This document shows, piece after piece, positions 4,988 to 60,372 of a stretch of 64,000 nt of DNA. The stretch covers positions 171,594 to 235,593 of IMG/VR virus record IMGVR_UViG_3300026518_000006. The stretch is one strand, 5' to 3'. Below the pieces are notes generated by a model. The model was not told the origin of the DNA and did not search any database. It worked only from the letters and a program-made list of their open reading frames with translations. The position numbers were made by a program, and so were the translations under genes. Numbering within the stretch: the first letter of the stretch is position 1; each line of letters opens with the position of its first letter.

Positions 4988-5016
4988 AGATTTTACTTTT
5001 CAAAAAAGTAAAATCT
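4988..5016. repeat. Dispersed palindrome copy (no adjacent early promoter)
   Basis: AGATTTTACTTTT-CAA-AAAAGTAAAATCT between convergent genes. Confidence 0.9.
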
Positions 5017-5026
5017 CTCAAAGAGC

Positions 5027-6586
5027 CTACATATCCTCAAAGTTAATTTTTTTGTGATTCTTGAGAGTAGGTGTTACACCATCACCATTTTCTGTAGTAT
5101 TGAGCCACAGAACTTTAGGTTTAAATTTCAACCAATTTTCATCAGTATCCACATCTTCAATATACATATCAGAAATCATAATCAGCACATCGGGCTTCGC
5201 ATTTTTGCTTTCAAGGAACGGCACAATAGCACCCATATATGTACCTCCATACCCTCTTCGTTTAAAGTGCTTATTTTTTTCTCCAAATTCTTCAATGCTT
5301 TTAATTTCTGTATCAATTTGAATAACCTTCAAATCGGTACCGTTAAGTTTAGCTACTTCCAAAATCTCAACAAGACCGTCCAAAATTTGTTCATCACTCA
5401 TAGACCCTGAAGTATCAACTCCAACATAAATTTCGTGTTTATCTTTTGTGACCTTTTTACCTCTTAGGTCAGTTCTTCTTGGAAATCTTCTATCTCTTCG
5501 TTTGATAGTAGGCTCTCTCTTTCCTGTTTTTGAGCTGAGTATTCTTCTCAGTTCTTTTTTCCAAGAAACTTTTGGTTTTCGTCTAAGGATATCCAAAATC
5601 TGCTCAATATCTCCCGGAAGATGACCTCTTTGGGTAGAACTCATAGAATCTTTAACCATTTTTTCTGCAACAGAGCGAGCGAGTTCTTCTGAGTCTTCAT
5701 CACTTTCACACCAAGTAGAATGATTGTCGATTGTATAACTTTTGTCGAGATTTGTTAAGTTAGGGTGTCCGTTAGAAGGCTCCCATTTACCACCATCTTG
5801 TTTTCCTGAGCCACCACAGGATTCACAAGGCTCTTTACCTCCATCTTCATTAGCTTGACTTTGACCATTTTCGTCTTTATTTCCATCTTCTTGACTTTGA
5901 CCATTTTCGTCTTTATTTCCATCTTCTTGACTTTGACCATTTTCGTCTTTATTTCCATCTTCCTTATTTTGACCATTTTCGTCTTTATTTCCATCTTCCT
6001 GATTTTGACCTTGGTTATTCTTGTCTTGTTCTCCTGAGCCACCACAACTTGAACAAGAGCTCTGATTTTTCATAAACTCACTTTTCTCTTTTTCTTGTTG
6101 TTTTTTTTCTTCTAAAAGGAGTTCATAGTATTGTTCAGCGGTAAGGTTTTGGGGGAAATCAAAATCTTCAGGATAAAGGGCTCCACCAACTTTTTTGCCT
6201 GTCACAGGGTCTTTTGTTCCTTGGGGAAGGTTTTTGATAAGTTGATTCATAGCGATATCAGAAGCGTAATTGAACAACTGATGGTCACGCTCACCCTGTC
6301 TGAAAATGTGTCCTGAAATAATATGGCGACTTTCGTGGACAAGAACTGCAATTCTTTCGAGCAAAGACCATTTTTTAAACTCATCCCCAATTGCAAGATT
6401 GTATGAGTTTCCTGAAAATGATACGCCTGCTGTTTTGATTTCGGGAATGAATTTAATGCGACATTTTGCAATAATAAAAGAGTAGAAAGACACATCAAGC
6501 ATCTCAGGGTTAGTCATCATATTCGCCAATGCTTCTTCGAAAGCGTCTCTGTCGGGCTGAATGTTATATTTCTTGTTTTCGGTCAT
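5027..6586 (-). CDS. VWA-domain protein with N-terminal putative metallopeptidase (DUF2201-like)
   Basis: HExxH (VHESRH), then NYASDIAMNQ; C-terminal MIDAS motif VDTSGSMS, GYGGT and MISD. Confidence 0.85.
   Translation of the reverse strand: MTENKKYNIQPDRDAFEEALANMMTNPEMLDVSFYSFIIAKCRIKFIPEIKTAGVSFSGNSYNLAIGDEFKKWSLLERIAVLVHESRHIISGHIFRQGERDHQLFNYASDIAMNQLIKNLPQGTKDPVTGKKVGGALYPEDFDFPQNLTAEQYYELLLEEKKQQEKEKSEFMKNQSSCSSCGGSGEQDKNNQGQNQEDGNKDENGQNKEDGNKDENGQSQEDGNKDENGQSQEDGNKDENGQSQANEDGGKEPCESCGGSGKQDGGKWEPSNGHPNLTNLDKSYTIDNHSTWCESDEDSEELARSVAEKMVKDSMSSTQRGHLPGDIEQILDILRRKPKVSWKKELRRILSSKTGKREPTIKRRDRRFPRRTDLRGKKVTKDKHEIYVGVDTSGSMSDEQILDGLVEILEVAKLNGTDLKVIQIDTEIKSIEEFGEKNKHFKRRGYGGTYMGAIVPFLESKNAKPDVLIMISDMYIEDVDTDENWLKFKPKVLWLNTTENGDGVTPTLKNHKKINFEDM
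5858..6010 (-). repeat. 36-bp tandem repeat x4 encoding GQxxEDGNKDEN
   Basis: TTGACCATTTTCGTCTTTATTTCCATCTTC recurs four times at 36-nt spacing. Confidence 0.9.
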
Positions 6587-6679
6587 TTTTTTACCTCTCT
6601 TTGGTTTTTATATAAGTAATTATAGTGTATAAAACCTTAAAGAGAGGTAAAAACTCATTTAAATATTATTTAAATGAAG

Positions 6680-7030
6680 TTATGCGAGTGGAATTTCTTC
6701 TTCATTAATATCATCTGTATCGTCAGATTTACACTCTTCATTTTCTTGGATAAAGTCATCAACCACAGTTTCAATAAGACGCTCTATTGTTTGGGTGAGG
6801 TCTGCATTAGGAAACAGCTTTGAAAATAATTCATTAAAATCATCTGCAATTTCAATTGTAATGCCACCTTCTTGTGTAAGTTCTGTATCTTCAGGAATTT
6901 TGATAGGTTCTTCACCATTCATAGCATACTCAGCCATTACCTGTACAAATAAACCCATATCAATGACCTGATTTGTGTCGAGTGGTTTTACTTCTGTTTC
7001 GGGTTGTTTGGTGTTTTTGTCTTTACTCAT
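6680..7030 (-). CDS. Acidic hypothetical protein (probable start MSKDKNT)
   Basis: AAGGA RBS before the ATG at 7030; the longer ORF call overlaps the divergent gene. Confidence 0.6.
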   Translation of the reverse strand: MSKDKNTKQPETEVKPLDTNQVIDMGLFVQVMAEYAMNGEEPIKIPEDTELTQEGGITIEIADDFNELFSKLFPNADLTQTIERLIETVVDDFIQENEECKSDDTDDINEEEIPLA

Positions 7031-7093
7031 AAGAGTCCTTTTTTTGTTTTTATAAATATAGTAATAATACAATACCAAAATTAAAGGAAGCTT

Positions 7094-15766: not shown

Positions 15767-15967
15767 AGTACTTAATTATTAGTCGTAGTGCTCAACCTTT
15801 TTCATCTTCTTTCTGTTGTATCTCTTTTTGTTTTGTGTGTTTCGGATAGTCCCTATCTGACACTCACCACGAATACCTGCTAAAATATTCAAATCCCTTG
15901 GTTTAACAGTCTTTTTATTTTTCTTTTTCTTAGCCATTTTCAATCCTTTTATAATATTTATAAGACT

Positions 15968-16065
15968 ATTATACAATAATCTTTGAAAGAAGTCAAGGAT
16001 TTTTGTGTATTTTTTGAGTATTTTGAGGACTTTTAAAGATTTTACTTTTTTAAAAAGTAAAATCT
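15968..16065 (-). promoter_or_regulatory. Early cassette: palindrome plus sigma70 promoter
   Basis: Palindrome 16037-16065; TTGACT-N17-TATAAT at 15996-15968; AAGGATTGAAAATG RBS/start at 15937. Confidence 0.85.
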
Positions 16066-16709
16066 CTTGAAGAGGTGAGAAAAGGTTATATCCCGCACTC
16101 AGGGTAACGCTCATATATACTTAGTAGTTTTTCATTTAGGGTATCGACACTTTTTTGTAGGCTTTCGTTTTCTTTCTGTAGAGATTCTATTATGTCTTGA
16201 GAATATTCCACCTCTCCATTTAAATCTTTAATTTCATTGATAGCCACATCTATCTGAAGTTCAAATTCTTTAATTTCTTCATTTGTTTTTTCGATAATAG
16301 AACAAAGTGGACATTCCATACCGTATCCGATAATGGGGTTATGTCTATTGGCAAAATCACCAACACACACCCACAAAAATTCTTCATCTTCCACGATAGA
16401 ATGTAGGTACTCCTCTATCTCTTTGATGTTTGAAGTCAAGTTATATTTGGCTACCATTTAATTTATTTCCATCACAATGTTTTGAGGTTCGCTATAGAAT
16501 ACTGCTTTGAATACCTTGATGTTCTTTTTTATTGTGGGGTAGTTCAGCATATATTTAAATACCTCATCTTTAGTAAACAACATTGCTTCTTTAAGGTTTT
16601 CTGTGGTGTCAAAACCACCTGTCGAATCATCAATTGTTTTAAAGAATTTCCCTTCATACTCAATATAAAATAGAATATCTTTGATGTCTGTTTTTCTCAT
16701 AATAACTCC

Positions 16710-17267: not shown

Positions 17268-17623
17268 TACTTTTCCTTAATCAATTTGTATAATTGGGCT
17301 CATTATAGCCTCTTCACGCTCGACATCAATATCATAATCACATTCACCCGACAAAATTTCTTCTTTATTAATAGAAACTCTCCATTTTTTACTTTCAACT
17401 TCAACTTCCATAATGTCATCAGAATCTTTATCAATATAAATGGCATAAGTAACGATTGGAATATTGGTATTCAAGTCAACTGAAACTGTGCCGAAATCGA
17501 TATTGTCGATGTCTTCTAAAGTTTCTCTGTCAAACCCGTATTCAACAAGAGCTTCCAAAGCCTCTTTTGGTAACTGTGGTATTTGTTGTTTCATTTTCAA
17601 TCCTTTATCTCTTTTTATACCCT

Positions 17624-17652
17624 ATTATACAATAATCTTTAGAAGAAGTCAA
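17624..17652 (-). promoter_or_regulatory. Early sigma70 promoter repeat
   Basis: TTGACTTCTTCTAAAGATTATTGTATAAT. Confidence 0.85.
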
Positions 17653-17690
17653 GTGGTTTTGAGAGATTTTTGTGTACTTAAATAAAGTAC

Positions 17691-18299
17691 TTAAATAAAA
17701 TACTGAGGAAAGTGTTCTTTACCGAACTCAATATATTTTTGTTTAATGTCTTTGTCTAACTCTACATTAGGGTAATAATATTTGTTTTCAAATGAAGTTA
17801 TTTGGTTATTATAACAATAGAATTTGCCCTCAATATCAGGACAGTATTTAAATGAAGTTATTTGATTATCACTACAATTAATATCACCTTTAATATCAGG
17901 ACAGTATTTAAATGAGGTTATCTCGTTATAACTACAATAAAAATAACCACCAATATCAGGACAATACTTGAATGAGGTTATTTTGTTTCCCCTACAATTA
18001 AAATCCCCCTTAATATCAGGACAATACTCAAAGGAAGTTATTTGATTTCCACTACAATAAAAATCACCCTTAATATCAGGACAAAACTTAAATGAGGTTA
18101 TCTCGTTATAGACACAACTAAAGTCACCCTTAACATCAGGACAGTATTCAAATGAAGTTATTTTGTTATAACTACAATCAAAATTACCCTCAACTCTTTT
18201 ATAACAACCCTCTAATGAAGTCAATCCTTTTTCAGAGACATCAAGGTCTCCATAATAGACTTCATTTGATTTGTCTCCGTAGAGGTCTTTGAATGTCAT
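17691..18299 (-). CDS. Leucine-rich-repeat-like protein, paralog 1 (7 x 20-aa repeats)
   Basis: LTSLEGC followed by 60-bp repeats encoding NxITSFxYCPDIKGDFxC; ends FPQYFI. Confidence 0.85.
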   Translation of the reverse strand: MTFKDLYGDKSNEVYYGDLDVSEKGLTSLEGCYKRVEGNFDCSYNKITSFEYCPDVKGDFSCVYNEITSFKFCPDIKGDFYCSGNQITSFEYCPDIKGDFNCRGNKITSFKYCPDIGGYFYCSYNEITSFKYCPDIKGDINCSDNQITSFKYCPDIEGKFYCYNNQITSFENKYYYPNVELDKDIKQKYIEFGKEHFPQYFI

Positions 18300-18318
18300 T
18301 TGAGTCCTTTTTTATCTT

Positions 18319-18347
18319 ATTATACAATAATCTTTAGTAGAAGTCAA
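18319..18347 (-). promoter_or_regulatory. Early sigma70 promoter repeat driving LRR paralog 1
   Basis: TTGACTTCTACTAAAGATTATTGTATAAT; the -35 overlaps the upstream gene's TGA. Confidence 0.85.
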
Positions 18348-19642
18348 GGCATAAAAACCTCTATAGCAATCGTAGTGAAATATTTTACTTCATTAAGTGC
18401 TTCTTTTTCAGTAATATCAGCACCTATCCACTTTCCCTTATCATCATACAGTCCATATAAAGCTTTTCTATATGCTTCTTTATCTGTCATTCCTGCAAAA
18501 TCAAAGTAATATTTTCCATTATAGATATTAAAAAAATTAAAAACTTTGTTATAAAAGTCCTTGTTTTTAACAATAGGAACCTGAAAACCTTTTTCTTTTG
18601 CCATTTCAACAGCTACACTTTTATAATGGTTGAGAATTTCAGGGTACAAGTCTTTAAGCCCTTTCAGTAAGAAAAAAATCTCATAAACAGAGCGGTTTTT
18701 AAGTTCTTCTGCTGTTTTCTCAGCAAGCACCTCATCATTATTATCAACTGATTTTTTGATATTCTGATAAAACTTTTTTATTTCTTTTACTGTCATAATT
18801 TACCTTTCTATTTTGACTTTATTGATTGGATATTCATCACCAAACTTTCCTTGAAGTTCATCAGTGTTACACACAACAACTTTGCTTGTACAGTATCTCA
18901 CTTTATAAACATTTCCGCCTACTTTTAGTGTACCTTTTGTTTTATTAAAAAGTTCCTTTCATCACTTCTTCCCCATTTTTTCTTCTACTTCTTTATACTT
19001 ATTCTCCACATTAACCAACTCCATCTCTGCTTTAGAAAGCTCATATTCATACTTGTGCATAGAGTTTTTCAAAAGGTTTCTTGTCAATGACAACTCTTCG
19101 CCCATTGTATTCAATAATTCCAACTCAACCTTTGCTTTTTCGACATTTTCCTTTTTGAGCCTAACCACATTCTTTTTAATACTAAGCTCTTTTTCAAAAG
19201 GGTTCTCGTTTTTATTGACTTTCTCAATCAAATCCTTTGTCATTTCACTCACATCAGCTTTACCCTTAATACCATTAAAGCCTGTACTATAATTAGCTCT
19301 TGTGGTTACTTTGTTATATCTCTTTTTCTGATTGATTTTTGCCTCGACTCTTTTTTGGTTGATTAGGTAGAAATCGATATAGATTTCTTGAAGTATCTGT
19401 GAATTCGAAACAAAAGCGTTGTTTTTTGGTTTTCCGTTATCGTCATAATAGTCGTTACAGCCATATATCGAAACTCTATCAACAATAGGACTTGTTTTTT
19501 CGTTATAGTCGCTAATACCAACAATCTCCATAACTTCATCAACTTTTACTTTAAGATTTGGTCTATCTTTAACAAACTCTTTCAAACTTTTTAGGTCAGT
19601 TACTTGTACCATTTTCAATCCTTTTCTCTTTAAATATACTGT

Positions 19643-19731
19643 ATTATACAATAATCTTTAATAGAAGTCAAGTGGTTTTGAGGACTTTTTGATGACTTTT
19701 AAAGATTTTACTTTTCAAAAAAGTAAAATCT
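19643..19731 (-). promoter_or_regulatory. Early cassette: palindrome plus sigma70 promoter
   Basis: Palindrome 19703-19731; promoter 19671-19643. Confidence 0.85.
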
Positions 19732-19760
19732 CTTGAAGAGATTAGGAGATAAGAAGACGA

Positions 19761-20075
19761 TTAAAAATCATCTTCTTCTTTAGGAAGTTCTTGACTTGGT
19801 AGAACCTGAAAACCAACGGTGTCTTGTGTGCCATCGCCATTGCTGTCGAATTTTCTAAGGTTTAATTTATAAACATTAGACCCTATCACAATATCATAAG
19901 ATTTCATATTGACTCCATCGCCTGTCATATTTTCAATATGCTTGAAAACAAATTTATCGCCATATTTTCCTTTAAGCCAACCCTCTGCATCTTCAACTGC
20001 TTTAGAAAGATTAAACTCTTCACTTTCTTTTAGTTTCTTGTAATTTTTAAATTTCATAATATTTCCTATTATCAC
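19761..20075 (-). CDS. Late hypothetical protein (possible head-internal protein)
   Basis: TATAAATA on the minus strand at 20083-20090; N-terminal MKFKNYKKLKE resembles cleaved leaders of T4-like internal proteins. Confidence 0.4.
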   Translation of the reverse strand: MIIGNIMKFKNYKKLKESEEFNLSKAVEDAEGWLKGKYGDKFVFKHIENMTGDGVNMKSYDIVIGSNVYKLNLRKFDSNGDGTQDTVGFQVLPSQELPKEEDDF

Positions 20076-20714: not shown

Positions 20715-21343
20715 AAAGTGTTATCCAAAGTTCTAATGACTTCAAAAGATTCGGCATATTTCATTCCGCATTGTAATCCTCTATACTCTGCGTAAATCAA
20801 AATACCGCTAATACTTCTAGGGTCAGGGTATCGGTTTATTTCATCTTTATAGCACTCCATTGCGCTTATTTTTTTATCGATATGGTTGTGTATGTTCACA
20901 AAATGAGTAGGATTAAATGGTGATGGTTGTAAATTAGACCCCATCACTTCATAAGCAAATATTTTTTCTACAAAATATTTATTAGGTCGTGTTGCTACCA
21001 TTGTAGCTTCATACGCAATTTTATGGTCTTGATTTAAGTCATTTTTAGAGTGGGTGTACAGAATATTAGGAGACACAATATCTATAATATCCGCAATAAC
21101 ATCCGCAATTTTTGATTGCGGAACAGTTTCAAAATGTTGAGCTTCAAACTTTCCAAATAGAATGTTATTCCGACAAACACCCAATTCATTCACAGCACTG
21201 TAAATATGATTTAGGTCTGTTATTCTTCCTGTACTCAAATACAAAATAAAAACATCATCTTGGTTTTCGATATGTTTTGCGATAGTTCCACCACACCCAA
21301 GAACTTCGTCATCAGGGTGAGAAGCTATAAATAGAACATTCAT
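20711..21343 (-). CDS. PIG-L/LmbE-family N-acetylsugar deacetylase
   Basis: ASHPDDEVLGCGG, THS..DLNQDH and KISAM..Y motifs. Confidence 0.9.
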   Translation of the reverse strand: MNVLFIASHPDDEVLGCGGTIAKHIENQDDVFILYLSTGRITDLNHIYSAVNELGVCRNNILFGKFEAQHFETVPQSKIADVIADIIDIVSPNILYTHSKNDLNQDHKIAYEATMVATRPNKYFVEKIFAYEVMGSNLQPSPFNPTHFVNIHNHIDKKISAMECYKDEINRYPDPRSISGILIYAEYRGLQCGMKYAESFEVIRTLDNTL

Positions 21344-23936: not shown

Positions 23937-24429
23937 AAGCTTACCATACCTCTACCGTTATTTTTTTGGAGACGAGTTTGTTTCCGAATTTTTCTTTATA
24001 CAGACGATAGGCTATTGAACTACCATTCAGCCTCATAGCGACTTTGCTCACTCTGTCTGTATGAATAATTTCTGTTTTTGCACCAACAGTCTTTTGGAGG
24101 TTAAAGGCACTATCTCTCATATCACAAAAATATACATCCAAATCCACACCCTCTGTATCAACTATTTTCTCGTTTTGGTTTATTACAGGTTTTATTACAG
24201 GTTTTATTACAGGTTTCATCTCTTGTCCTTTATCTCTATTTTGAAGTTTTTGTTGTCAGGAGATAGCATAAGTCCGTAGGTACCATATAGAGATTGAGTG
24301 AGTTTATCTACTTCACACATCGCTTTGTGCTCTTTTCCATTTCTTTCAAAAGTTATATATGCCCTTTGAGACTTTATCTCATTGATGTTTCGTCTTTTCA
24401 TTTCAATCCTTTATCTCTTTTTATACCTG

Positions 24430-24517
24430 ATTATACAATAATCTTTAATAGAAGTCAAGTGTTTTGAGAGATTTTTGAGTAGTTTTGAAGATTTTATTTT
24501 TCAAAAAAGTAAAATAT
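24430..24517 (-). promoter_or_regulatory. Early cassette: palindrome plus sigma70 promoter
   Basis: Imperfect palindrome 24489-24517; promoter 24458-24430. Confidence 0.8.
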
Positions 24518-24610
24518 TTGAAAGAGGTTTAAAACAAGACAAATTAAGTCTTATTTAAGACAGTATTAATTTTTTATAAGTATAATGCGTAAAATTACAA
24601 AAGGAACACT

Positions 24611-25744
24611 ATGGCTTGTTCATTAGAGGGTGGGTGTGGTAGCTCATCAGAAAGTATTCATATAGATATCAATACTACTAGCATTTGTAATATTGCTTGT
24701 ACTTATTGTTCAGAGGGAAATGAGTGTGGTTTGAGTACTCTATATATGGGGAATACTGAGGTAAAAGTAGAAGACTTGATTAAAAAATTAGGCAAAGACC
24801 CCGCTAAACATAAGACTATAAATTTTTGGGGGGGAGAGCCTTTTGTAAATTTTGATTTCTGCAAAGCTATTATAGACGGTTTTAAAGATGACAAAACATT
24901 TAGTTTCTTTTTTTATACCAATGGGTTGTATATACCAAATTATATCGACCAATTAAAGCGATGGAATGAAGAATTCGGGAAAGAGTTAAACGCTGATGGA
25001 CAAAATAGATTGTATCTTCAAATAAGTTATGATGGGCGACACCTCACAAATACAGTGAGAGTGGATAAAGGCGGTCACGGCACTGCTGATAGAGTTGAAA
25101 AGGCATATAAATTACTAAAAGAAAACAATATAGGAACTTCATTAAAAGCAGTGATTAGCACCGATGGTTTTCCATATCTTTTTGAAAGCTTTAAAGATTT
25201 ATATGAGCTTCAAGGTTTTTATTCACCAACACCTGATTTATGGTCTGATAGAAGTGAAGAAGAGTTCAATACTGATTTAGAAATACTTGGAAAAGAGCTT
25301 GAGAAGATAGCAAAGTATATATACCAAAATGATTTGAGTCCTGAAGTATTTAGTTGGTTTGCTAAATCAAGAGCGATTTGTAGTACAGGTGCGGGTATGC
25401 TTAGTATAGACCTTGATGGTGGCATATACCCTTGTCACGCAGGTATGTATGGTGAAAGCGAAGAGCATAAAATAGGAGAGCTTGAAGATTGGGAACATAT
25501 TAGAGAAAATGTTATGGATGACTTTAAAAAAATTAATACCAATCTTCCATTGGAATGTCAAACTTGTGATGTAAATTATTGTATGAAGTGCCAAATATCA
25601 AACTACGCAAAATCTACAAAAGATACATACGAGGAAAGATTTACAGATTATCAAGCAAATTGGCAGGTTTGCAAAATATTTAAAATGAACGACAAATATA
25701 ATAAAACACTGAGATATGCAATGACACAAAAAGGATTGAGATGA
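24611..25744 (+). CDS. Radical SAM/SPASM enzyme 1
   Basis: CNIACTYC, FWGGEP, TNG, ISYDG; SPASM cysteines CSTG...YPCH...CQTC....CMKC. Confidence 0.93.
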   Translation: MACSLEGGCGSSSESIHIDINTTSICNIACTYCSEGNECGLSTLYMGNTEVKVEDLIKKLGKDPAKHKTINFWGGEPFVNFDFCKAIIDGFKDDKTFSFFFYTNGLYIPNYIDQLKRWNEEFGKELNADGQNRLYLQISYDGRHLTNTVRVDKGGHGTADRVEKAYKLLKENNIGTSLKAVISTDGFPYLFESFKDLYELQGFYSPTPDLWSDRSEEEFNTDLEILGKELEKIAKYIYQNDLSPEVFSWFAKSRAICSTGAGMLSIDLDGGIYPCHAGMYGESEEHKIGELEDWEHIRENVMDDFKKINTNLPLECQTCDVNYCMKCQISNYAKSTKDTYEERFTDYQANWQVCKIFKMNDKYNKTLRYAMTQKGLR

Positions 25745-30082: not shown

Positions 30083-30087
30083 TCACC

Positions 30088-30140
30088 AACCTCTTTTAAA
30101 GATTTTACTTTTTTAAAAAGTAAAATATTTCAAAGAGGTT
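30088..30140. repeat. Extended palindrome copy after the S74 gene
   Basis: AACCTCTTT...AGATTTTACTTTT-TTA-AAAAGTAAAATAT...AAAGAGGTT. Confidence 0.85.
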
Positions 30141-30757
30141 GTTTCTTCAAAAAAATTTAAGCCTATTTTTATATAATAATTCAATTTAACATAAGGTATT
30201 ATAATGCTATTCGAGATAAAACGAAACGACAACAAAATTTATATTTTAGGTAAAGCTACTTCAAAAAATGAAAGTTCCCTTGAGTTTGATGATAGTTTAG
30301 AGGCTGTAGTAAATGAAAATAGAGAGAAAAATAAGATAGTATATTATGACACTAATCTTGACAAAATTAAAATTGAAGACTCAAAGTATAGAGATATTCC
30401 GGTGACAGACTTTAATCGAGTAAAAGCCCTTAAAAAGGCTAGATTGGATTTAGAAAGTATCGTAAAAGATGTGGATATGATTGACTACATCAGATATATT
30501 GATTGCAATAACGAGCTTAATTCAAAAGGTTATTTTGTGACCGATGAAAATCGTGAGGAGGTTTATCTTGATATTTTAGAAAAAGGTGACGAAAAAGTGA
30601 TTGATATCCTTGAAGAATTTCTGATTACTAAAGATAAACTTACAATTATAAAATCAGCCAAGAAAAGATATGATGAGCTTGAAGAGGAAATTAAAGCGTC
30701 AAGTGAAGAAAATTTGGACACAAAAAAATTAAGTGAATTGTTGAATATAGAGTTCTA

Positions 30758-39727: not shown

Positions 39728-39728
39728 A

Positions 39729-41589: not shown

Positions 41590-42579
41590 ATGAGACAGTA
41601 TGATTTTAATTATATTGATAGCAAAGTAGTTGGGTTTATGATAAATGATATTTGTAATATGGCTTGTACTTATTGTTATCAACAAGCAAACAATTTATGT
41701 GAAGACGACCACAAAAAAAATAGAGCTCTTATTGATAAAGTGCTTGATTATGTTGTGCATCTATCAGAAGTAGATAGACCTCATCAGATAAGCATAGAGG
41801 GAGGGGAGCCATTTTTTGATACACAAACATTAGAATACTTTTTCACACAGGTTGAAAAAAAATTAAAACAATACCCAAATTTTTATTCAAGGATATTAAT
41901 TGTAACAAACGGGACTAAAAGAGATAATATAAAATACATTATAGATAAATTTGATTTTAGTGCTTTCAATGTCACAATGGAAGTATCATTACATTATACG
42001 CAAATGTCAAATACAGCACTAAAAAAATTCACATCTAATGTTGTGGAATTTAAAAAATATATTGAGTATGTTAGAGTATTGGCACCATTAAGCCTAAAAA
42101 AGCTCCCAAAATACCTAAATATTATATTGAAAGTGTTAGATTTGCACGATGTATATTATTTTTTTGCACCAATTGTAGGATTAAATGAAATTAATGAGAT
42201 ATATGATATGAGTGGTTTTCCTTTTAAGGGTGAGGTAGATGTTTTAATAAATGGGGAAACAAAGAATATCAATGCAATATACGACAAATCACTAACAACT
42301 GACGGTATGGTGTGTGAAAATAATCAGTGCTTCTTTTTTTATAATACAGGGGATATAAAAATGTTTTCCTGTATTAATAATAGAGAAACAAAAAATATCT
42401 TCAAAGATAGTTTTGATGATATTTTTCAAATGGATAAACGAACAATATGTACTCTTGATTATTGTATGGACTGTAATTTGAATACAAAATATGAGATGTC
42501 TGAGTTAGACCCAAACAATAAAGACGATGCTGACTTAATAAAATATTACATAGAGCAACGAAATAATACATCTTTCTAA
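41590..42579 (+). CDS. Radical SAM enzyme 9
   Basis: CNMACTYC, EGGEPF, TNG, SLH; C-terminal Cys cluster. Confidence 0.9.
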   Translation: MRQYDFNYIDSKVVGFMINDICNMACTYCYQQANNLCEDDHKKNRALIDKVLDYVVHLSEVDRPHQISIEGGEPFFDTQTLEYFFTQVEKKLKQYPNFYSRILIVTNGTKRDNIKYIIDKFDFSAFNVTMEVSLHYTQMSNTALKKFTSNVVEFKKYIEYVRVLAPLSLKKLPKYLNIILKVLDLHDVYYFFAPIVGLNEINEIYDMSGFPFKGEVDVLINGETKNINAIYDKSLTTDGMVCENNQCFFFYNTGDIKMFSCINNRETKNIFKDSFDDIFQMDKRTICTLDYCMDCNLNTKYEMSELDPNNKDDADLIKYYIEQRNNTSF

Positions 42580-44956: not shown

Positions 44957-45761
44957 TTTATATGTGGTTTTTGGTGGAACAGGTGTAATAGGAAAAAGTC
45001 TTATAAAAAGATTGGTGTCCGAAAATAAAAAAGTGGTGAATATAAGCCGTGTAAACAAAAATGAGCAAGCTAATAAAAACTATCAGTTAGATTTGGGCAC
45101 CGCTTCTTATGATGATATTATGCGGTTGTATACGAAAATCAGAAATGATTTTTCGGAATATGTTATAAAAGGTACTTTTTATTTAGCAACTTACTCCACT
45201 TCAGAGAAGATGAGCAAAAAGCAATTAGAAAATGAACCTAATGTTGTTGACAATATTATTGGATTATTTGGTGAGCCGTTTTTATATATGAGCTCTTACG
45301 CTGTTATGGATGATACAAAATTTAAAAGTGGTGATGTTAAGATAAATTATAGAAGAGCTAAAACAAATACCGAAAAAGTTATAACTAATTTTTCTGAATT
45401 AGAGGTTTATGCTTTGCGTGTTCCTGCTGTTTATGGTGGCTCTGATAATCATAGAGCAGTCTATAAAATAGCGGAAAGATTAAAAAATAATAAAGATGTG
45501 TGTATTCACGACAATAAGATATTGTTTGTTTATCTTAAAGAAGTTGTAGATGAAATTATGTCGATTTACTCAAAAGATGGGTTGTTTCCCAACTCTTATG
45601 AAGATTTTGATTTAGATAATGTGTTTGTTCTTGAAAAACAAGAATTGCCGTTGTTGAATATTGTGTTCAATCTAAAGACTGTCTTTAAAAGTTCATCTGA
45701 TATAATTATAGATATATCAGATGAAGAGGACGCATTTATCAGAACAATACTCAACGATTGA
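44937..45761 (+). CDS. NAD-dependent epimerase/dehydratase (extended SDR)
   Basis: GGTGVIG, YMSS.AV, YRRAK (YxxxK), LRVPAVYG. Confidence 0.85.
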   Translation: MMKSGNDLYVVFGGTGVIGKSLIKRLVSENKKVVNISRVNKNEQANKNYQLDLGTASYDDIMRLYTKIRNDFSEYVIKGTFYLATYSTSEKMSKKQLENEPNVVDNIIGLFGEPFLYMSSYAVMDDTKFKSGDVKINYRRAKTNTEKVITNFSELEVYALRVPAVYGGSDNHRAVYKIAERLKNNKDVCIHDNKILFVYLKEVVDEIMSIYSKDGLFPNSYEDFDLDNVFVLEKQELPLLNIVFNLKTVFKSSSDIIIDISDEEDAFIRTILND

Positions 45762-45985
45762 GTGGAATATTTTTGTTATCTGAACAGATATCATAAACTC
45801 CATCTTTTTCAACTAAAGCATAAGCTCCATTTGAAGTAAGTACTTTATATCTTACTTCATCTACCATTACTATAAAGCTTTTGTCGAGTTTTGCTGTGTT
45901 TACAAACATCTCAACTAAATCTTCAAACTGCTTTTTTGCTTGGTTAAAAGTCATTTTCAATCCTTTATCTCTTTTAAGGTACCTA

Positions 45986-46084
45986 ATTATACAATAATCT
46001 TTAGAAGAAGTCAAGTAGTTTTAGAGGTTTTTGAGTATTTTTTGAGGACTTTTGAAGATTTTACTTTTTGAAAAAGTAAAATCT
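45986..46084 (-). promoter_or_regulatory. Early cassette: palindrome plus sigma70 promoter
   Basis: Palindrome 46056-46084; promoter 46014-45986. Confidence 0.85.
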
Positions 46085-46093
46085 CTTGAAGAG

Positions 46094-46642
46094 CTATATG
46101 AAATACTGAGGAAAGTGTTCGTTACCGAACTCAATATATTTTTGTTTAATGTCTTTGTCTAACTCTACATTAGGATAGTAATACTCGTTTTCAAATGAAG
46201 TTATTTGGTTATTATAACAATAGAATTTGCCCTTAACATCAGGACAGTATTTAAATGAAGTTATCTGATTATAACTACAATTAATATCACCTTTAATATC
46301 AGGACAAAACTCGAATGAAGTTATTTGATTTCCACTACAATTAATATCACCCTTAATATCAGGACAAAACTCGAATGAAGTTATCTGATTTCCACTACAA
46401 TCAAAATTGTCCTTAATATCAGGACAATACTCAAATGAGGTTATCTCGTTATAGGCACAATTAAAGTCACCCTTAATATCAGGACAGTACTTAAATGAGG
46501 TTATTTTGTTATAACTACAATCAAAATTACCCTCAACTCTTTTATAACAACCCTCTAATGAAGTTAATCCTTTATCAGAGATATTAAGGTCTCCATTATA
46601 GACTTCATTTGATTTGTCTCCATAGAGGTCTTTGAATGTCAT
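46094..46642 (-). CDS. Leucine-rich-repeat-like protein, paralog 2 (6 x 20-aa repeats)
   Basis: Near-identical N- and C-termini to 17691-18299, with one fewer repeat. Confidence 0.85.
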   Translation of the reverse strand: MTFKDLYGDKSNEVYNGDLNISDKGLTSLEGCYKRVEGNFDCSYNKITSFKYCPDIKGDFNCAYNEITSFEYCPDIKDNFDCSGNQITSFEFCPDIKGDINCSGNQITSFEFCPDIKGDINCSYNQITSFKYCPDVKGKFYCYNNQITSFENEYYYPNVELDKDIKQKYIEFGNEHFPQYFI

Positions 46643-49320: not shown

Positions 49321-50277
49321 ATGGCTTCAAAACCGAATATTACTATAAATGAACGAGAGACAATCTTTATTGAGAGATTTAGACCTAAAACCATAGACGA
49401 CATTATTCTACCAAAAAATATCAAAGATGATATACGGAAGTGGAAAGAAGAAGGGCAGATACCAAATCTCCTACTTGTATCAAAAAAAGCAGGTTTAGGA
49501 AAAACATCTTTAGCCCACACTATTATTAATGAGTTGCAAGCCGAAGCTAAGTTTATCAACGCTTCATTAGAAAGTAATATCGACACCCTCAGAAGCAAAA
49601 TCAAAGGCTTTGTATCTACTGAAAGTTTCAACGGAAAACCTAAAATTGTGGTTCTTGACGAAGCAGATTTTCTTAACCCAAATAGCACACAGCCTGCTTT
49701 AAGAGCTTTTATAGAAGAGTTCAGCCAAAGTGCCCGCTTTATCCTCACTGCTAATTATATAGACAAAATTATTGAACCTCTTCAAGATAGACTTATGGAT
49801 TATAACTTTGATGACATCTTTAATGACCATAAAGAACTGGTCAAGGACATTTATGTTAGATGTTCTGCTATTTTAGAGGAACAAAATATCGAATTTAAAA
49901 AGGAAGATTTAGTATATTTAATTAAGCATTTTTATCCAAGTACAAGAAGTATTGTAAAAAAACTTGAACAGTTTTCATATAGTGGGAAACTTGTAATTAA
50001 CAAAGACCGTCTTGACAGCGATACTATCATTGATACTGTTATTGACACTATCAAAACTTCAGACTTCGATAGAATGCGGAAAACGATTATAAACATAAGC
50101 GACCCTGCTATGTTGTTCACTGAGTTTTATGATAGATTAGATGAGTTCCCTATCGAAAAGCGTCCACCTATCCTTATGTGTATCGCAAAATATCAAAGTT
50201 GGGACGGAGTAGTGAGAGATAGAGTAGTAAATACCGCCTCTATGTGTACTGAACTTATGGGTATTATAAGAGATTGA
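49321..50277 (+). CDS. gp44: Clamp loader large subunit (T4 gp44/RFC-like AAA+)
   Basis: ERFRPKTIDDIILP, GLGKTS, INAS, VLDEAD, QPALRAFIEEF, FILTAN. Confidence 0.93.
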   Translation: MASKPNITINERETIFIERFRPKTIDDIILPKNIKDDIRKWKEEGQIPNLLLVSKKAGLGKTSLAHTIINELQAEAKFINASLESNIDTLRSKIKGFVSTESFNGKPKIVVLDEADFLNPNSTQPALRAFIEEFSQSARFILTANYIDKIIEPLQDRLMDYNFDDIFNDHKELVKDIYVRCSAILEEQNIEFKKEDLVYLIKHFYPSTRSIVKKLEQFSYSGKLVINKDRLDSDTIIDTVIDTIKTSDFDRMRKTIINISDPAMLFTEFYDRLDEFPIEKRPPILMCIAKYQSWDGVVRDRVVNTASMCTELMGIIRD

Positions 50278-52970: not shown

Positions 52971-53022
52971 TTAAACCTAAAATTAAGATATGTACTCCAC
53001 AAATTTAATATCGCTCTTCAAG

Positions 53023-53120
53023 AGATTTTACTTTTTAAAAAGTAAAATCTTCAAAAATCCTCAAAAAATACACAAAAATCTCTAAAACTACTTGACTTCT
53101 TCTAAATATTATTGTATAAT
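53023..53120 (+). promoter_or_regulatory. Early cassette: palindrome plus sigma70 promoter
   Basis: Palindrome 53023-53050; TTGACT at 53092, TATAAT at 53115. Confidence 0.85.
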
Positions 53121-53360
53121 TAGGTATATTAAAAGGGAAAAGGGTTGAAAATGAAAATTGAAATTAAAGAGCTCGTTCTTAATGACAAAAGAGTAAAACT
53201 CCAAAAAAGAGGAGTTTTTATAAATGATTCTCAGGTCGCAGTAGTAACAACAAATAAAAATATGAGCACAACGATTAAAACGGATAACCGAACAATCGAA
53301 GCTATGTGGTTGATGAGTGAGCCCCAAATCATCTGTGAGGTACTTGACCTCATTAGATGA

Positions 53361-57424: not shown

Positions 57425-57758
57425 GTGAGTACTCGATATATTAAAGTTGTGAGAAAAAAGGCTACCCTGAGTTCAGATTTGTCGCAAGAAAACCAAAAGG
57501 TGTTGTATATCTGTCTTACTCGACAAACCAAAAAAGAATTGAACAAAAAATTTACGAAAAAATTTACTCCGATATGTATGAGAAAGAAGAAGAGCTCTCG
57601 AAGAAATATGAGCCAAAAGAGCAGGAAATCGAGAAAAAATATACGCTCTCCATAGGGAGTTGGATAAACTTAGAGATGAATACAACAATGAATTAGAAGA
57701 CATAATGAATAAAATCGTGTCGGAATTCAAAGAAAATAACCCACAATATTTTATTTAG
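57425..57758 (+). pseudogene. PEYFI-tag gene broken by two -1 indels in GAGAAAAAA runs
   Basis: Adding one A at about 57454 and at about 57634 gives MSTRYIKVVRKKGYPEFRF...EKKIYALHRELDK...ENNPQYFI. Confidence 0.6.
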
Positions 57759-57773
57759 TTGTATCTCTTCAAA

Positions 57774-57859
57774 AGATTTTACTTTTTTAAAAAGTAAAAT
57801 CTTTTGAAGTACCCGAAAAGTACAAAACACTTGACTTCTACTAAAGATTATTGTATAAT
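57774..57859 (+). promoter_or_regulatory. Early cassette: palindrome plus sigma70 promoter
   Basis: Palindrome 57774-57802; TTGACT at 57831, TATAAT at 57854. Confidence 0.85.
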
Positions 57860-59147
57860 TAGGTATCTTAAAAGAGAAAAGGATTGAAAAATGGAAGTAA
57901 AAGTCAAACAAATTGATTTCGGCTTCAATGGTGTTTGTGATGAACATCAAGAACTTAGAAGAGATGTCTCCTGTTATAGAGGAGAAAAGTTGGCAAAGAT
58001 TGTTCTTAAAAACAAAGACAAACTGAAAACTGTTGCTTCTTATCAGGCAGGTGGGAGACTGTCTGAATGCCTTGAGGAGGCATTTCGTTTGACGAATAGT
58101 GTTGATAGAGCTTGGTATGAAAATCCTGAGATTTCAGTTTCAGAGTATGCGAAAGGCGGATGTCGTTCAACTTCTGTTGGTGATGTAATAGAGATTGCGG
58201 GTGTTCAGTATATGGTAGATGGATATGGCTTTATCTGCCTTGATGATGTGGAGGGTGATTAAAATGGTTTCAAATTATTTAAACAAAACAGATGCTGATA
58301 TTATGTTGGATTGGTTGAAATCCTTTTATGCCGATGAGGTTATAACAACAGTATCTTTAAAAAACAAAGAACTACAAGTGACTTTTAAAGATGGTTATGC
58401 TAAAATATTTCAAGATGAAATTCAATCTGACAAAACAAGTATGAAAAATTACTATATCCATAGGTGTGGGGATAAAGTAATTATTACAAAAGGATATTAA
58501 ATGTGCGAAAAAATCAAACAATCTTGTTCAGAGTGGTCTGAACTTTTTAATGCTTAGAAAATCGGAAAACAACTCTTAAAAAAGGTATCTAAAAGACCTA
58601 CAAACTTTAAAGTACAGTTGACTCCCCACAACAAAAAAGAAGTTTTTAAAAAAATGTTAGGTATGTTTTCAGACACTGATATAAAAGTCGTTATGAATAA
58701 CTCGACAACTACCAACAAAAAGCTGACTAATAAAGGTAAATACGGATGGGCATACTTTTTCTCATCAAACTGCCAAACCTCCGATTATTTTTATGTTGGG
58801 TGGTCTTATGATTATAATAACAAAGATGTATTTGGTAAAAATTACTATGAGGAAAAATGGACATTCGAAATCTCACACCTTATAGATGGTGACTTCTATG
58901 TTGAAAAAGAATTAACCTTGGATTGTATTATGAATGGTTCCACTCCTGATGATTGGATTATCAAACCAAATACTCCTGTCTTGGAATATCAGTGGCTTTA
59001 CACAGTTCCTACAGACGATTTGTATTACCTGACGGAAGAGCGTTTTGCCACAAAAGAAGAAGCTAAAAGAAAGATGAAGTGTTATGCAGAAGGTATAAAA
59101 ATAATCAAGCGTATTAAGCGGACTGTGAAAACAAGAGAGGTAAAAGA

Positions 59148-59945
59148 ATGTTAGACCATAAAAAATTAGATGAATTCAGCGGGTTTACCAATGCTACTAT
59201 GAATTTAGAAAATCCTAAGCTGTCTTTTGAAAACTTAAAACTAAATGATTTTACTATATTGGTTGGGGAAAATTCATCAGGTAAATCTTTCGCACAAAAA
59301 ATTATTTGGGCTAATACTTTTGCGCTCAATAGCTTTATAAATGATTATATCCAAAAAACATCGTTGTTTAGCGAAACTTCCAAAGAGGAATTTTTAGAGT
59401 TTTTGTTGAGTAATACTTTTGATGACTTTGATTTTACTGGCAAAATTCGTTTCTATGCTCAAGACAAAATTCTTGATGTGCCTTATTATATTCTTGAGTA
59501 TAAACTTTCTAATGGAAAAATATCAGATTTATTTATCGACTTTCCTACTAATGTTAAATCTGCTACCAAACCAATTTATATGAGCAAACAAACAAGACAA
59601 TTTGAATTTATCACACAATACCTTAATACAAAAAGTATTATGGGAATTGGCTTAAACACAGAAGAAGAGATTAAAGAGATTTGCGAGTTGTACAAACTTT
59701 ATGATGTATTGGCGATGGAGGAATTGGTTCATAAATTCCCATTAGTCGGCAAACTTTTAAATAGCCCACTTATTCCAAAAGAAATTATGGGAGATTTTGA
59801 TGTAAAGACCATATACTATAATAAGGACAGAAAAGCTATTTGTTACACAGATAGTTCAGATAAAGAGAGAAATATAACCACATTAGGTGATGGGCACCAA
59901 GCTATGTTGATTATGCTCTTGGGTTTAGTTCCCGATGAGGTTTAA
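59148..59945 (+). CDS. AAA/ABC-type ATPase (OLD/AAA_15-like N-terminal part)
   Basis: FTILVGENSSGKS; LGDGHQ signature near the end; no Walker B before the stop. Confidence 0.6.
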   Translation: MLDHKKLDEFSGFTNATMNLENPKLSFENLKLNDFTILVGENSSGKSFAQKIIWANTFALNSFINDYIQKTSLFSETSKEEFLEFLLSNTFDDFDFTGKIRFYAQDKILDVPYYILEYKLSNGKISDLFIDFPTNVKSATKPIYMSKQTRQFEFITQYLNTKSIMGIGLNTEEEIKEICELYKLYDVLAMEELVHKFPLVGKLLNSPLIPKEIMGDFDVKTIYYNKDRKAICYTDSSDKERNITTLGDGHQAMLIMLLGLVPDEV

Positions 59946-60276
59946 TCTTTATCTTAAATTATAGTGATATAATACACTAATACAACTAATACACAAAAAG
60001 GAAAATATTATGGTGACTTATATTGGTAGTGAGAAGTATGAAATTGAGCTTGGTGATACAAAATGTATCGTGACATCTCAAAATATTGAAGAGTTTTTAT
60101 TTGACCTGAAAAGTATCGTAGAACTTGATGAAAATATCAGCTTTAATATTATAGATGATGAGGATATGAAAGATACCCTTGAAAGTGAGTACAATTTAGG
60201 GTATGAAGACGCAAAAAAACACTATAATAGAGTTAGTGATATTGTTGATGATATGTGTGGATAATACTTCTTCAAG

Positions 60277-60372
60277 AGATTTTACTTTTTTGAAAAGTAA
60301 AATCTTCAAAAGTTCTAAAAATCCTAAAAATCTCATAAAGTACTTGACTTCTTTCAAGGATTATTGTATAAT
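60277..60372 (+). promoter_or_regulatory. Early cassette: palindrome plus sigma70 promoter
   Basis: Palindrome 60277-60305; TTGACT at 60344, TATAAT at 60367. Confidence 0.85.

What the first reader, a model, noticed from the sequence alone, without database searches (positions are those of the whole stretch)
4988..60372. Nine-copy 29-bp palindrome coupled to a near-identical strong early promoter cassette
Seen: AGATTTTACTTTT-N2-3-AAAAGTAAAATCT at 4988, 16037, 19703, 24489, 30100, 46056, 53023, 57774 and 60277. Seven copies lie about 28-42 bp upstream of the -35 of TTGACTTCT.{2-3}AAGATTATTGTATAAT, usually followed by AAGGATTGAAAATG. Two promoters (17624, 18319) lack the palindrome and two palindromes (4988, 30100) lack the promoter. 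Inference: an operator or activator site, or a bidirectional terminator insulating early units. The long identical cassettes could also drive recombinational shuffling of accessory genes, as proposed for promoter/stem-loop repeats in some T4-like phages.
Basis: partly seen in the sequence, partly recalled or inferred. Interest (0 to 1): 0.6.

Follow-up and report, generated by a model that had tools for sequence, protein, structure and literature searches.

The report
Stem-loop plus early-promoter cassettes (PeSL-type)
A large T4-like phage from hydrothermal vents carries about two dozen copies of one AT-rich hairpin, mostly joined to a nearly identical strong promoter; this matches the "promoter-early stem-loop" cassettes already described in other T4-like phages, so it is a clean new example, not a new kind of element.

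Summary
All nine palindromes and nine promoters are at the stated places; none is expected by chance. The window is the last 64 kb of a 235.6-kb T4-like phage contig found in hydrothermal-vent metagenomes. Genome-wide there are 24 palindromes and 26 promoters. Nineteen form one oriented cassette of about 125-140 bp: upstream stop codon, CTCTTCAAG, palindrome, two to five A-tracts spaced about 10.5 bp, TTGACT-17-TATAAT, conserved leader, ribosome site, ATG.

The variable number of A-tract units explains the "28-42 bp" spacing. This is the architecture of PeSLs, the composite terminator/promoter cassettes of T4-like phages (Arbiol 2010; Comeau 2014).

The hairpin most likely acts as a boundary (terminator or attenuator) of the upstream transcription unit:
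- It follows stop codons.
- Stand-alone copies with longer stems sit at late-gene ends and convergent junctions.
- Copies with no upstream co-directional gene are degraded.

It is not a canonical terminator: it is AT-rich with no U-tract, and canonical terminators exist nearby. The arms are conserved more than a hairpin alone needs, so a sequence-specific protein is not excluded.

Cassettes are mosaics, flank a seven-copy LRR gene family, and bound a two-allele module in other samples. The nearest relative has its own cassette and no shared palindrome. No function was tested.

The parts
15938..16074 (-). Full cassette. Flank CTCTTCAAG at 16066-16074, palindrome at 16037-16065, 40-bp A-tract spacer, promoter at 15968-15996 and a leader running to the ATG of a 52-aa ORF (15779-15937).
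   Evidence: RNA hairpin -14 kcal/mol, z -4.8
19613..19740 (-). Full cassette. Palindrome at 19703-19731, 31-bp spacer (3 A-tracts), promoter at 19643-19671 and a leader. It drives a 216-aa ORF (18962-19612). It sits 29 nt after the stop of ORF 19761-20075, which carries a TATAAATA motif upstream.
   Evidence: hairpin -14 kcal/mol
24402..24526 (-). Full cassette with a degraded palindrome at 24489-24517 (2 mismatches), 30-bp spacer and promoter at 24430-24458. It drives a 61-aa ORF (24216-24401). It lies in a divergent intergenic region facing the radical SAM gene 24611-25744.
45955..46093 (-). Full cassette. Palindrome at 46056-46084, 41-bp spacer and promoter at 45986-46014. It drives a 67-aa ORF (45751-45954). 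It sits 9 nt after the stop of the LRR paralog 46094-46642.
53014..53150 (+). Full cassette. Palindrome at 53023-53050 (28 bp), 41-bp spacer and promoter at 53092-53120. It drives a 69-aa ORF (53151-53360).
57765..57890 (+). Full cassette. The palindrome at 57774-57802 is extended to a perfect 43-bp palindrome at 57767-57809. The spacer is 28 bp and the promoter is at 57831-57859. It drives a 123-aa ORF (57891-58262), whose homolog in the relative is also cassette-driven.
   Evidence: (-21.6 kcal/mol)
60268..60398 (+). Full cassette. Palindrome at 60277-60305, 38-bp spacer and promoter at 60344-60372. It is followed by a 19-aa ORF (60399-60458), a 50-aa ORF and then the DNA ligase gene 60656-61993.
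4988..5016 (.). Stand-alone palindrome with no cassette promoter. It lies between the convergent tail-fibre-like gene 2676-4961 (+) and the DUF2201 gene 5027-6586 (-). It keeps the oriented flanks of the cassette. With its flanks it folds to about -20 kcal/mol on both strands.
30087..30141 (.). Stand-alone palindrome. The core at 30100-30128 is extended by CCTCTTT/AAAGAGG-type flanks to a stem of about 24 bp (-22 kcal/mol). On the + strand a U-rich tail follows. It sits 17 nt after ORF 29783-30082, which has a Peptidase_S74 chaperone domain typical of tail fibres.
17595..17690 (-). Promoter-only cassette. Promoter at 17624-17652, with two A-tract units and a leader; it drives a 105-aa ORF (17277-17594). 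The palindrome and the first spacer unit are missing. The junction falls in an AAGTAC repeat that elsewhere flanks the palindrome on both sides. The same arrangement occurs at genome position 111105.
18300..18347 (-). Promoter-only copy at 18319-18347. The stop codon of the upstream ORF 18344-18796 lies inside the -35 hexamer. A short leader follows, and it drives the LRR paralog 17691-18299.
17691..18299 (-). LRR-repeat protein, one of seven paralogs in the genome. Each paralog is flanked by cassettes.
46094..46642 (-). Second LRR paralog in the window. Its stop codon lies 9 nt before palindrome 46056.

Best explanation
These are PeSL-type (promoter-early stem-loop) regulatory cassettes of a distant T4-like phage. 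Each full copy is an oriented module of about 125-140 bp that makes the next gene a self-contained early transcription unit. The module has five parts.

(a) The palindrome is transcribed at the end of the upstream unit. It folds into a 13-15-bp A-U-rich hairpin and marks the boundary of that unit. Its inferred role is a terminator, attenuator or 3'-end hairpin that keeps upstream transcription from running into the promoter. Because it is symmetric it can act in both directions, and it is also used alone at late-gene ends and convergent junctions.

(b) Two to five A-tracts phased at about 10.5 bp form an UP-element-like, intrinsically bent upstream region. This is inferred.

(c) A consensus TTGACT-17-TATAAT promoter is read by host sigma-70-type RNA polymerase straight after infection. 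This is inferred.

(d) A conserved leader with an AAGGA ribosome site sits 6-8 nt before the ATG.

(e) The copies are kept nearly identical by recombination or gene conversion within the genome. That same homology lets cassette-flanked genes be duplicated, swapped or lost.

Shown here: the sequence architecture, copy number, positions, folding potential, T4-like affiliation, mosaicism and lineage specificity. Inferred: promoter activity, timing, termination and the recombination mechanism.
For: Architecture. 19 palindromes are followed by the promoter in one fixed orientation, with a conserved upstream flank and leader.

A-tracts. They start 8, 18-19, 29-30, 39-40 and 50-51 nt before the -35. 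The spacing is quantised at 19-21, 28-31, 38-42 and 52-53 bp. The periodicity peak is at 10.75-11 bp, p about 3e-6.

T4-like affiliation. The major capsid protein matches Gp23 at E 2.7e-84. The helicase is gp41-like. The T4-type late motif TATAAATA lies within 70 nt upstream of 52 of 369 ORFs, including structural genes, and is a class separate from the cassette.

Published definition. PeSLs are described as upstream stop codon, AT-rich region, stem-loop, sigma-70-like promoter, Shine-Dalgarno sequence and ATG. They lie in plastic regions, the stem-loop terminates in a reporter, the stem-loop sequence differs by lineage, and recombination between copies has been shown. T4 early promoters are UP/-35/TGn/-10 promoters.

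Boundary role of the hairpin.
- It lies 9-120 nt after a co-directional stop codon in most copies.
- It folds at -12 to -14 kcal/mol with z of -4 to -5.
- Stand-alone copies have stems extended to -20 to -22 kcal/mol and sit after late-type genes or between convergent genes.
- All 4 copies in divergent intergenic regions carry mismatches, against 2 of 15 co-directional copies (Fisher p 0.004).
- The first flanking pair is always pairable on the sense strand, as G-U in 15 of 24 copies.

Exchange and homogenisation.
- Variants of the proximal spacer, promoter spacer and leader occur in all combinations.
- Seven LRR paralogs are each flanked by cassettes.
- In two other samples the piece 18320-19639, bounded by two cassettes, differs at 2.4% while the neighbouring pieces differ at 0.3% or less. 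A third sample has the reference allele.
- The nearest relative (capsid protein 80% identical) has 11 near-identical cassettes of a different sequence at orthologous genes and no shared palindrome.
Against: The hairpin is not a canonical intrinsic terminator. It has 2-3 G-C pairs in 13 and no U-tract after the stem in most copies.

Canonical GC hairpins with T-runs exist elsewhere in this genome. One lies 22 bp from a palindrome, which would make a pure terminator redundant there.

The 13-bp arms are 96-98% identical across copies, more than the segments on either side (74-80%). That is more than a hairpin alone needs. Covariation support is only marginal: 8 double-sided cells against 5.5 +/- 1.4, reached by 34 of 500 shuffles.

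Four cassettes have no upstream co-directional gene to terminate.

No RNA data exist for this phage. The recombination evidence is indirect. The joints seen in other samples are confounded by paralogous copies.
Confidence: 0.6

Rival explanations
1. The palindrome is a double-stranded DNA site for a sequence-specific dimeric protein, phage- or host-encoded. The protein would regulate the adjacent early promoters as a shut-off repressor, an activator or a roadblock in the manner of stoperators. The phased A-tracts would keep the site on one face of the helix relative to RNA polymerase.
For: The arms are as invariant as the -35 and -10 hexamers and more conserved than both flanks. Spacing to the -35 changes only in steps of about 10.5 bp. 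The relative lacks the palindrome, as it would if it lacked the cognate protein. A canonical terminator next to one copy suggests the palindrome does something else there.
Against: The separation of the half-sites varies (27, 28 or 29 bp overall), which fixed dimers tolerate poorly. The helical phasing follows automatically from a tandem array of 10-11-bp units. Five copies have no cassette promoter and sit at gene ends. Copies in divergent contexts, where a promoter regulator would still be needed, are the degraded ones. No candidate protein was identified.
Confidence: 0.17
2. The palindrome is mainly a DNA-level recombination element. It would be a cruciform-prone AT-rich inverted repeat, or a target of a structure-specific nuclease or recombinase. 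It would promote cassette exchange, inversion and spread, with little or no role in transcription.
For: Cassette parts are mosaic. The asymmetric centre variants occur in both orientations relative to the promoter. The promoter-only copies at 17624 and genome position 111105 look like palindrome deletions between AAGTAC repeats. LRR genes are copied to seven sites on both strands, always with cassettes. A two-allele module is bounded by cassettes. Arbiol et al. raised the same idea for the PeSL stem-loop.
Against: T4-type recombination needs only short homology, which the promoter and leader already supply. Position right after stop codons, extension of stand-alone stems and decay in divergent contexts all point to a transcript-level role. 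No breakpoint was mapped inside a palindrome.
Confidence: 0.12
3. The hairpin is an RNA processing or stability element. It would be an RNase III-type cleavage site or a 3'-exonuclease block that sets the 3' end and half-life of the upstream mRNA.
For: With its flanks the sense RNA forms about 15 bp, a 2x2 internal loop and then 3 bp. That is about 20 bp in all, without a U-tract. This shape suits processing or protection better than intrinsic termination. It lies after stop codons.
Against: There are no RNA data and no Rfam match. This reading does not explain the invariant stem sequence any better than termination does.
Confidence: 0.08

Closest known systems
PeSLs (promoter-early stem-loops) of T4-like phages RB49/phi1, T4/PST and KVP40/nt-1 (Arbiol et al. 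2010, PMC2839356; Comeau et al. 2014, PMC4122927)
   Same: The repeat is a composite intergenic cassette. It has an upstream stop codon, an AT-rich region, a stem-loop just upstream of a near-consensus sigma-70-type promoter, a Shine-Dalgarno sequence and a start codon. It has many copies per genome, placed before small ORFs of unknown function and scarce in structural gene blocks. The stem-loop sequence is lineage-specific. Copies are mosaic and associated with gene duplication and allelic modules. The phage has a T4-type capsid protein, helicase and late-promoter motif.
   Different: The stem-loop here is a single AT-rich 27-29-bp palindrome that is almost invariant in 24 copies. The published ones are short G-rich/C-rich or A3-4G3/C3T3-4 stems of variable sequence and position. 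The AT-rich region is an ordered array of 2-5 phased A-tract units whose number varies. The palindrome also occurs alone at late-gene ends. The phage is only distantly related (helicase about 31% identical to cultured T4-likes). Promoter, terminator and mini-circle activities are untested.
T4 early promoters with UP elements (Hinton 2010, PMC2988021)
   Same: They have near-consensus -35 and -10 hexamers with a 17-bp spacer. A/T-rich sequence at -40 to -60 is positioned for alpha-CTD contact. Extra conserved positions lie outside the hexamers.
   Different: Here the TG sits at -14/-13, directly next to the TATAAT hexamer, one position closer than the canonical -15/-14 TGn. The A-tracts continue to about -85. 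The host polymerase is unknown.
Canonical intrinsic (Rho-independent) terminators
   Same: It is a stable hairpin shortly after a stop codon. It is symmetric and so potentially bidirectional. The stand-alone copy at 30100 has a G+C-clamped stem and a U-rich tail.
   Different: The core stem has only 2-3 G-C pairs and no U-tract. Canonical terminators occur separately in the same genome.
Stoperators of Cluster A mycobacteriophages (recalled from memory, not checked here)
   Same: They are two to three dozen near-identical short sites spread through intergenic regions of one phage genome, oriented with transcription.
   Different: Stoperators are asymmetric 13-bp repressor sites in temperate phages. 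Here the site is a palindrome in a T4-like lytic-type genome, tied to a promoter cassette, and no repressor is known.

Membership tests
PeSL cassettes of T4-like phages | The genome is a T4-like myovirus | tested here: met
   Gp23 (PF07068) matches at E 2.7e-84, with two weaker paralog matches. The helicase is gp41-like, with best hits to Vibrio and Campylobacter T4-like phages at 31%. TATAAATA lies upstream of 52 ORFs.
PeSL cassettes of T4-like phages | Sigma-70-like -35 and -10 hexamers with about 17-bp spacing, repeated many times | tested here: met
   25 copies of TTGACT-17-TATAAT share a spacer sequence, and one variant is TTGACA-17-TATAAT.
PeSL cassettes of T4-like phages | [quoted passage not shown] | tested here: met
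   There are 2-5 A-tracts phased at about 10.5 bp.
PeSL cassettes of T4-like phages | A sequence able to form a stable stem-loop in or just upstream of the promoter | tested here: met
   Folds of -12 to -22 kcal/mol, z of -2.4 to -6.8 on the cassette (sense) strand, in 19 cassettes.
PeSL cassettes of T4-like phages | Bounded by the upstream stop codon and by the Shine-Dalgarno sequence plus start codon of the next gene | tested here: met
   Upstream stop codons lie 9-120 nt before the palindrome. A conserved leader with AAGGA leads to the ATG.
PeSL cassettes of T4-like phages | Enriched in plastic regions before small ORFs of unknown function, rare in structural blocks | tested here: met
   Cassettes are absent from the long late-gene blocks (about 49-75, 112-134, 151-187 kb). 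Of 10 cassette-adjacent proteins in the window scanned, eight had no significant family match, and the other two were the LRR paralogs.
PeSL cassettes of T4-like phages | Promoter and terminator activity shown in vivo | not testable with these tools
   No RNA run holds this phage.
PeSL cassettes of T4-like phages | Recombination between cassettes (indels between close relatives, mini-circles) | tested here: inconclusive
   Indirect signs exist: mosaic variants, LRR modules copied with cassettes, and a 2.4%-divergent allele of the module 18320-19639 between cassettes. The joints are confounded by paralogous copies.
Canonical intrinsic terminator | G+C-rich stem followed by a U-tract | tested here: not met
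   The core stem has 2-3 G-C pairs of 13, and the tails are UUAAAAG or UCAAAAG. Only the extended copy at 30100 comes close.
Operator of a dimeric DNA-binding regulator | Fixed half-site spacing and fixed position relative to the promoter | tested here: not met
   The overall length is 27, 28 or 29 bp. The distance to the -35 is 19-53 bp. Five copies have no cassette promoter.
Operator of a dimeric DNA-binding regulator | A cognate binding protein | not tested
   No candidate was identified.
Conserved structured RNA (Rfam) | Match to a curated family; covariation | tested here: not met
   There are no Rfam matches in the window. 11 of 23 pairs never vary, and covariation is marginal.

The most novel reading that the evidence does not exclude
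The invariant 13-bp arms are read by a sequence-specific factor. This could be a phage-encoded protein that binds the duplex, the extruded cruciform or the RNA hairpin. The 24 sites would then form one regulon or recombination system: a coordinated switch-off or insulation of about 20 early units, or a dedicated cassette-mobilising enzyme. That would give PeSL-type shuffling a specific protein partner, which Arbiol et al. only speculated about.
Probability: 0.18. Interest if true: 0.65.

Novelty: new member of a known kind. Interest (0 to 1): 0.4.

Why it matters
It extends PeSL-type cassettes from coliphages, Yersinia phages and vibriophages to a deeply branching, uncultivated T4-like phage of more than 235 kb from hydrothermal vents. 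It does so in an unusually clean form: one invariant hairpin, a countable number of phased A-tract units and a near-identical promoter and leader.

The regularity makes the cassette a good natural experiment on three questions. How much do upstream A-tract number and phasing add to promoter strength? Can an AT-rich hairpin without a U-tract insulate transcription units? Are such cassettes kept uniform by gene conversion and used to move accessory genes?

In practice the cassette marks the early genes of this phage, about 26 units, and gives a compact strong promoter and insulator part to test. It does not reveal a new kind of system.

Tried and rejected
It was corrected.
- Near-identity search of two cassette-rich stretches against deposited phages: no match.
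- Exact palindrome and exact promoter patterns in IMG/VR: no other contig.
- Palindrome core in JGI metagenomes and GTDB genomes: only the source contig plus four single, unrelated chance hits. These had 37-47% G+C and no promoter.
- Relatives through the helicase: none found.
- Homologs of the LRR protein: three contigs were fetched, with 24-27% G+C and no cassette.
- 70 capsid-gene neighbourhoods of relatives (844 kb): no palindrome and no cassette promoter.
- AsiA family search: no match, but the control was silent too, so this is uninformative.
- Rfam: nothing.
- Covariation test of the hairpin: marginal, and the core never varies. This counts neither for nor against the structure.
- Joints in other samples' contigs: mostly other cassette or LRR copies mapping onto this stretch. 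For example, the joint 16074>17698 matches the copy at 46056-46094. They were therefore rejected as evidence of rearrangement.
- The PHROG label 'HNH endonuclease' for the gene next to palindrome 4988 was checked. Pfam instead shows DUF2201 metallopeptidase-like and VWA-like domains. No link between the palindrome and a homing nuclease follows.

Full report
**1. The observation**

The palindrome pattern has seven exact matches in the window. None occurred in 100 dinucleotide-preserving shuffles. The copies at 24489 and 30100 are present with two and one mismatches.

In the window the palindrome-to-promoter spacing is 28-41 bp.

**2. The genome**

The window is the last 64 kb of a 235,593-bp linear virus contig. 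It has 32% G+C and an estimated completeness of 86%.

It is a distant T4-like phage:
- It has a T4-type major capsid protein (PF07068, E 2.7e-84).
- It has a gp41-like helicase whose best cultured relatives, about 31% identical, are Vibrio and Campylobacter T4-like phages.
- The T4-type late-promoter motif TATAAATA lies within 70 nt upstream of 52 of 369 ORFs, among them tail-fibre-like genes.

The same DNA occurs in hydrothermal-vent metagenomes from four studies, dated 2018-2025. No RNA run holds it.

**3. Anatomy**

Genome-wide there are 24 palindromes and 25 promoters of this type, plus one variant promoter. Nineteen palindromes are followed by the promoter, always in the same orientation. 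Together they form one module of about 125-140 bp, in this order:
- the stop codon of the upstream gene;
- a conserved flank, CTCTTCAAG;
- the palindrome;
- a spacer;
- TTGACT, 17 bp, TATAAT;
- a leader of about 30 nt, conserved in two or three variants, with an AAGGA ribosome site;
- the ATG.

The spacer is an array of two to five units of 10-11 bp, each holding an A-tract. A-tracts start 8, 18-19, 29-30, 39-40 and 50-51 nt before the -35. The spacing therefore takes only the values 19-21, 28-31, 38-42 and 52-53 bp. The periodicity is strongest at 10.75-11 bp, with p about 3e-6. The A-tracts sit where alpha-CTD UP-element contacts occur in strong promoters, including T4 early promoters.

Mean pairwise identity across the 19 cassettes:

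| Cassette part | Identity |
|---|---|
| -35 hexamer | 100% |
| -10 hexamer | 98% |
| Palindrome arms | 96-98% |
| Promoter spacer | 87% |
| Flank and A-tract units | 74-80% |
| Start of the leader | 62% |

**4. The hairpin**

On the cassette strand the RNA folds into a stem of 13-15 bp, extended over a 2x2 internal loop by three more pairs. The energy is -12 to -14 kcal/mol, with z of -4 to -5 in most copies.

The core has two or three G-C pairs and is not followed by a U-tract. In most copies it lies 9-120 nt after the stop codon of a co-directional gene.

Five copies lack the cassette promoter.
- Two lie between convergent genes: 4988 in the window, and genome position 146540.
- At least three follow late-type genes. 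Copy 4988 follows a tail-fibre-like gene. Copy 30100 follows an ORF with a tail-fibre chaperone domain. Genome position 33966 follows an ORF with a TATAAATA motif.
- Their stems are lengthened by complementary flanks to -20 to -22 kcal/mol, and 30100 also has a U-rich tail.

All four cassette palindromes that lie in divergent intergenic regions carry mismatches. There, no upstream transcript runs toward them. Only 2 of 15 co-directional copies carry mismatches (Fisher p 0.004). The four share one variant, so they are not fully independent.

The first pair outside the core is pairable in all 24 copies on the sense strand, as G-U in 15 of them.

These points favour a role at the end of the upstream transcript. 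Several points count against a plain terminator:
- Canonical G+C hairpins with T-runs exist in the same genome, one of them 22 bp from a palindrome.
- Covariation is only marginal.
- The arms are conserved more than their surroundings.

**5. Exchange and concerted evolution**

Variants of the proximal spacer, the promoter spacer and the leader occur in all combinations.

A family of seven LRR-repeat genes, 75-88% identical in DNA, is spread over both strands. Every copy is flanked by cassettes.

The promoter-only copy at 17624, and its twin at genome position 111105, look like a loss of the palindrome between short AAGTAC repeats that flank it elsewhere.

Other samples' contigs break at the cassettes, as expected for repeats. 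In two samples the piece 18320-19639, which lies between two cassettes, differs at 31-32 of about 1,320 positions. The neighbouring pieces differ at 0-4 of 700-1,570 positions. A third sample carries the reference allele there. This fits replacement of a cassette-bounded module. The resolution is limited, and the listed joints are confounded by paralogous copies.

The nearest relative found is an 81.7-kb fragment whose capsid protein is 80% identical and whose gene order is partly the same. It has 11 near-identical promoter cassettes of a different sequence, with an extended -10 and its own leader. They include the ones before the ligase gene and before the homolog of ORF 57891. Hairpins upstream of them are heterogeneous or absent, and there is no shared palindrome.

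So cassettes evolve in concert within each genome, and the palindrome is specific to this lineage. No other contig in IMG/VR, JGI metagenomes or GTDB genomes carries it in this context.

**6. Comparison with what is known**

The architecture is that of PeSLs, the composite terminator/promoter cassettes of T4-like phages. These are described as:
- upstream stop codon, AT-rich region, stem-loop, sigma-70-like promoter, Shine-Dalgarno sequence and ATG;
- concentrated in hyperplastic regions;
- with a lineage-specific stem-loop sequence;
- with stem-loops shown to terminate in a reporter;
- with recombination between copies that yields indels and mini-circles.

All sequence-level defining features are met here. 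The functional ones cannot be tested with these tools.

The differences are a single, long, AT-rich and nearly invariant palindrome, an ordered array of phased A-tracts in variable number, and use of the palindrome alone at late-gene ends.

**7. Verdict**

The finding is real and striking, but it belongs to a known kind. The most likely mechanism is a self-contained early transcription unit, insulated upstream by the hairpin and boosted by A-tracts. The copies are kept uniform by recombination and serve as substrates for it.

The operator reading is weaker but not excluded, because the arm sequence is constrained beyond what pairing requires. No function has been tested, and there are no RNA data.

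Noticed in passing
window 17691-18299 (-), 46094-46642 (-); five more copies elsewhere in the genome: There is a seven-member family of LRR-repeat proteins of 182-282 aa with internal 60-bp repeats. The copies are 75-88% identical in DNA and lie on both strands. Each is flanked by cassettes. Its function is unknown.
   Followed up: partly
window 17653-17690; genome C1:13574-13626, 21002-21067, 100621-100660: Tandem 11-13-bp repeats of the type AGTACTTTATTTA lie between the LRR stop codon and the palindrome or promoter. They look like duplications of the gene's last codons, and they resemble the A-tract spacer units read on the other strand.
   Followed up: partly
window 391, 7094, 15255, 23278, 28892 (+); 20075, 21660, 53936 (-): The T4-type late-promoter motif TATAAATA lies 23-43 nt upstream of these ORF starts (52 ORFs genome-wide). 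This gives a second, separate promoter class.
   Followed up: partly
window 18320-19639: Two alleles about 2.4% apart exist in vent samples from other studies, while the flanking DNA is 0.3% or less divergent. The step in divergence falls at the cassettes.
   Followed up: partly
window 60399-60458; genome C1:134809-134832: Two cassettes are followed by very short ORFs of 19 aa and 7 aa instead of a normal gene. The one in the window precedes a 50-aa ORF and the DNA ligase gene. They may be leader peptides, truncated genes or assembly errors.
   Followed up: no
window 24611-25744, 33076-34131, 39615-40679, 41590-42579: Four radical SAM genes lie within 18 kb. The order of this block is conserved in the relative. 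Multiple radical SAM genes are also reported for Campylobacter T4-like phages (recalled from memory, not checked here).
   Followed up: no
genome C1:150951-151028: A perfect 49-bp palindrome, the cassette core with both pair-2 bases changed in a compensating way, directly abuts a different consensus promoter (TTGACA-17-TATAAT) with no A-tract spacer.
   Followed up: partly
genome C1:91772-91847: A canonical bidirectional terminator (A-run, GC hairpin, T-run) sits 22 bp from a cassette palindrome. The two hairpin types are therefore not interchangeable, or one of them is redundant.
   Followed up: no
relative G001 (L099-L103), e.g. 74789-74860 and 49490-49560: The relative has its own near-identical promoter cassette (11 copies in 82 kb). 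At some sites short CCTCTAATA-type tandem units lie between a hairpin and the promoter. This suggests that the layout hairpin, short repeats, promoter is older than either sequence.
   Followed up: partly
whole contig: The phage recurs in hydrothermal-vent metagenomes of four studies from 2018 to 2025. The low G+C, the AAGGA ribosome sites and the kinship to Campylobacter phages hint at a Campylobacterota host, but this was not tested.
   Followed up: no
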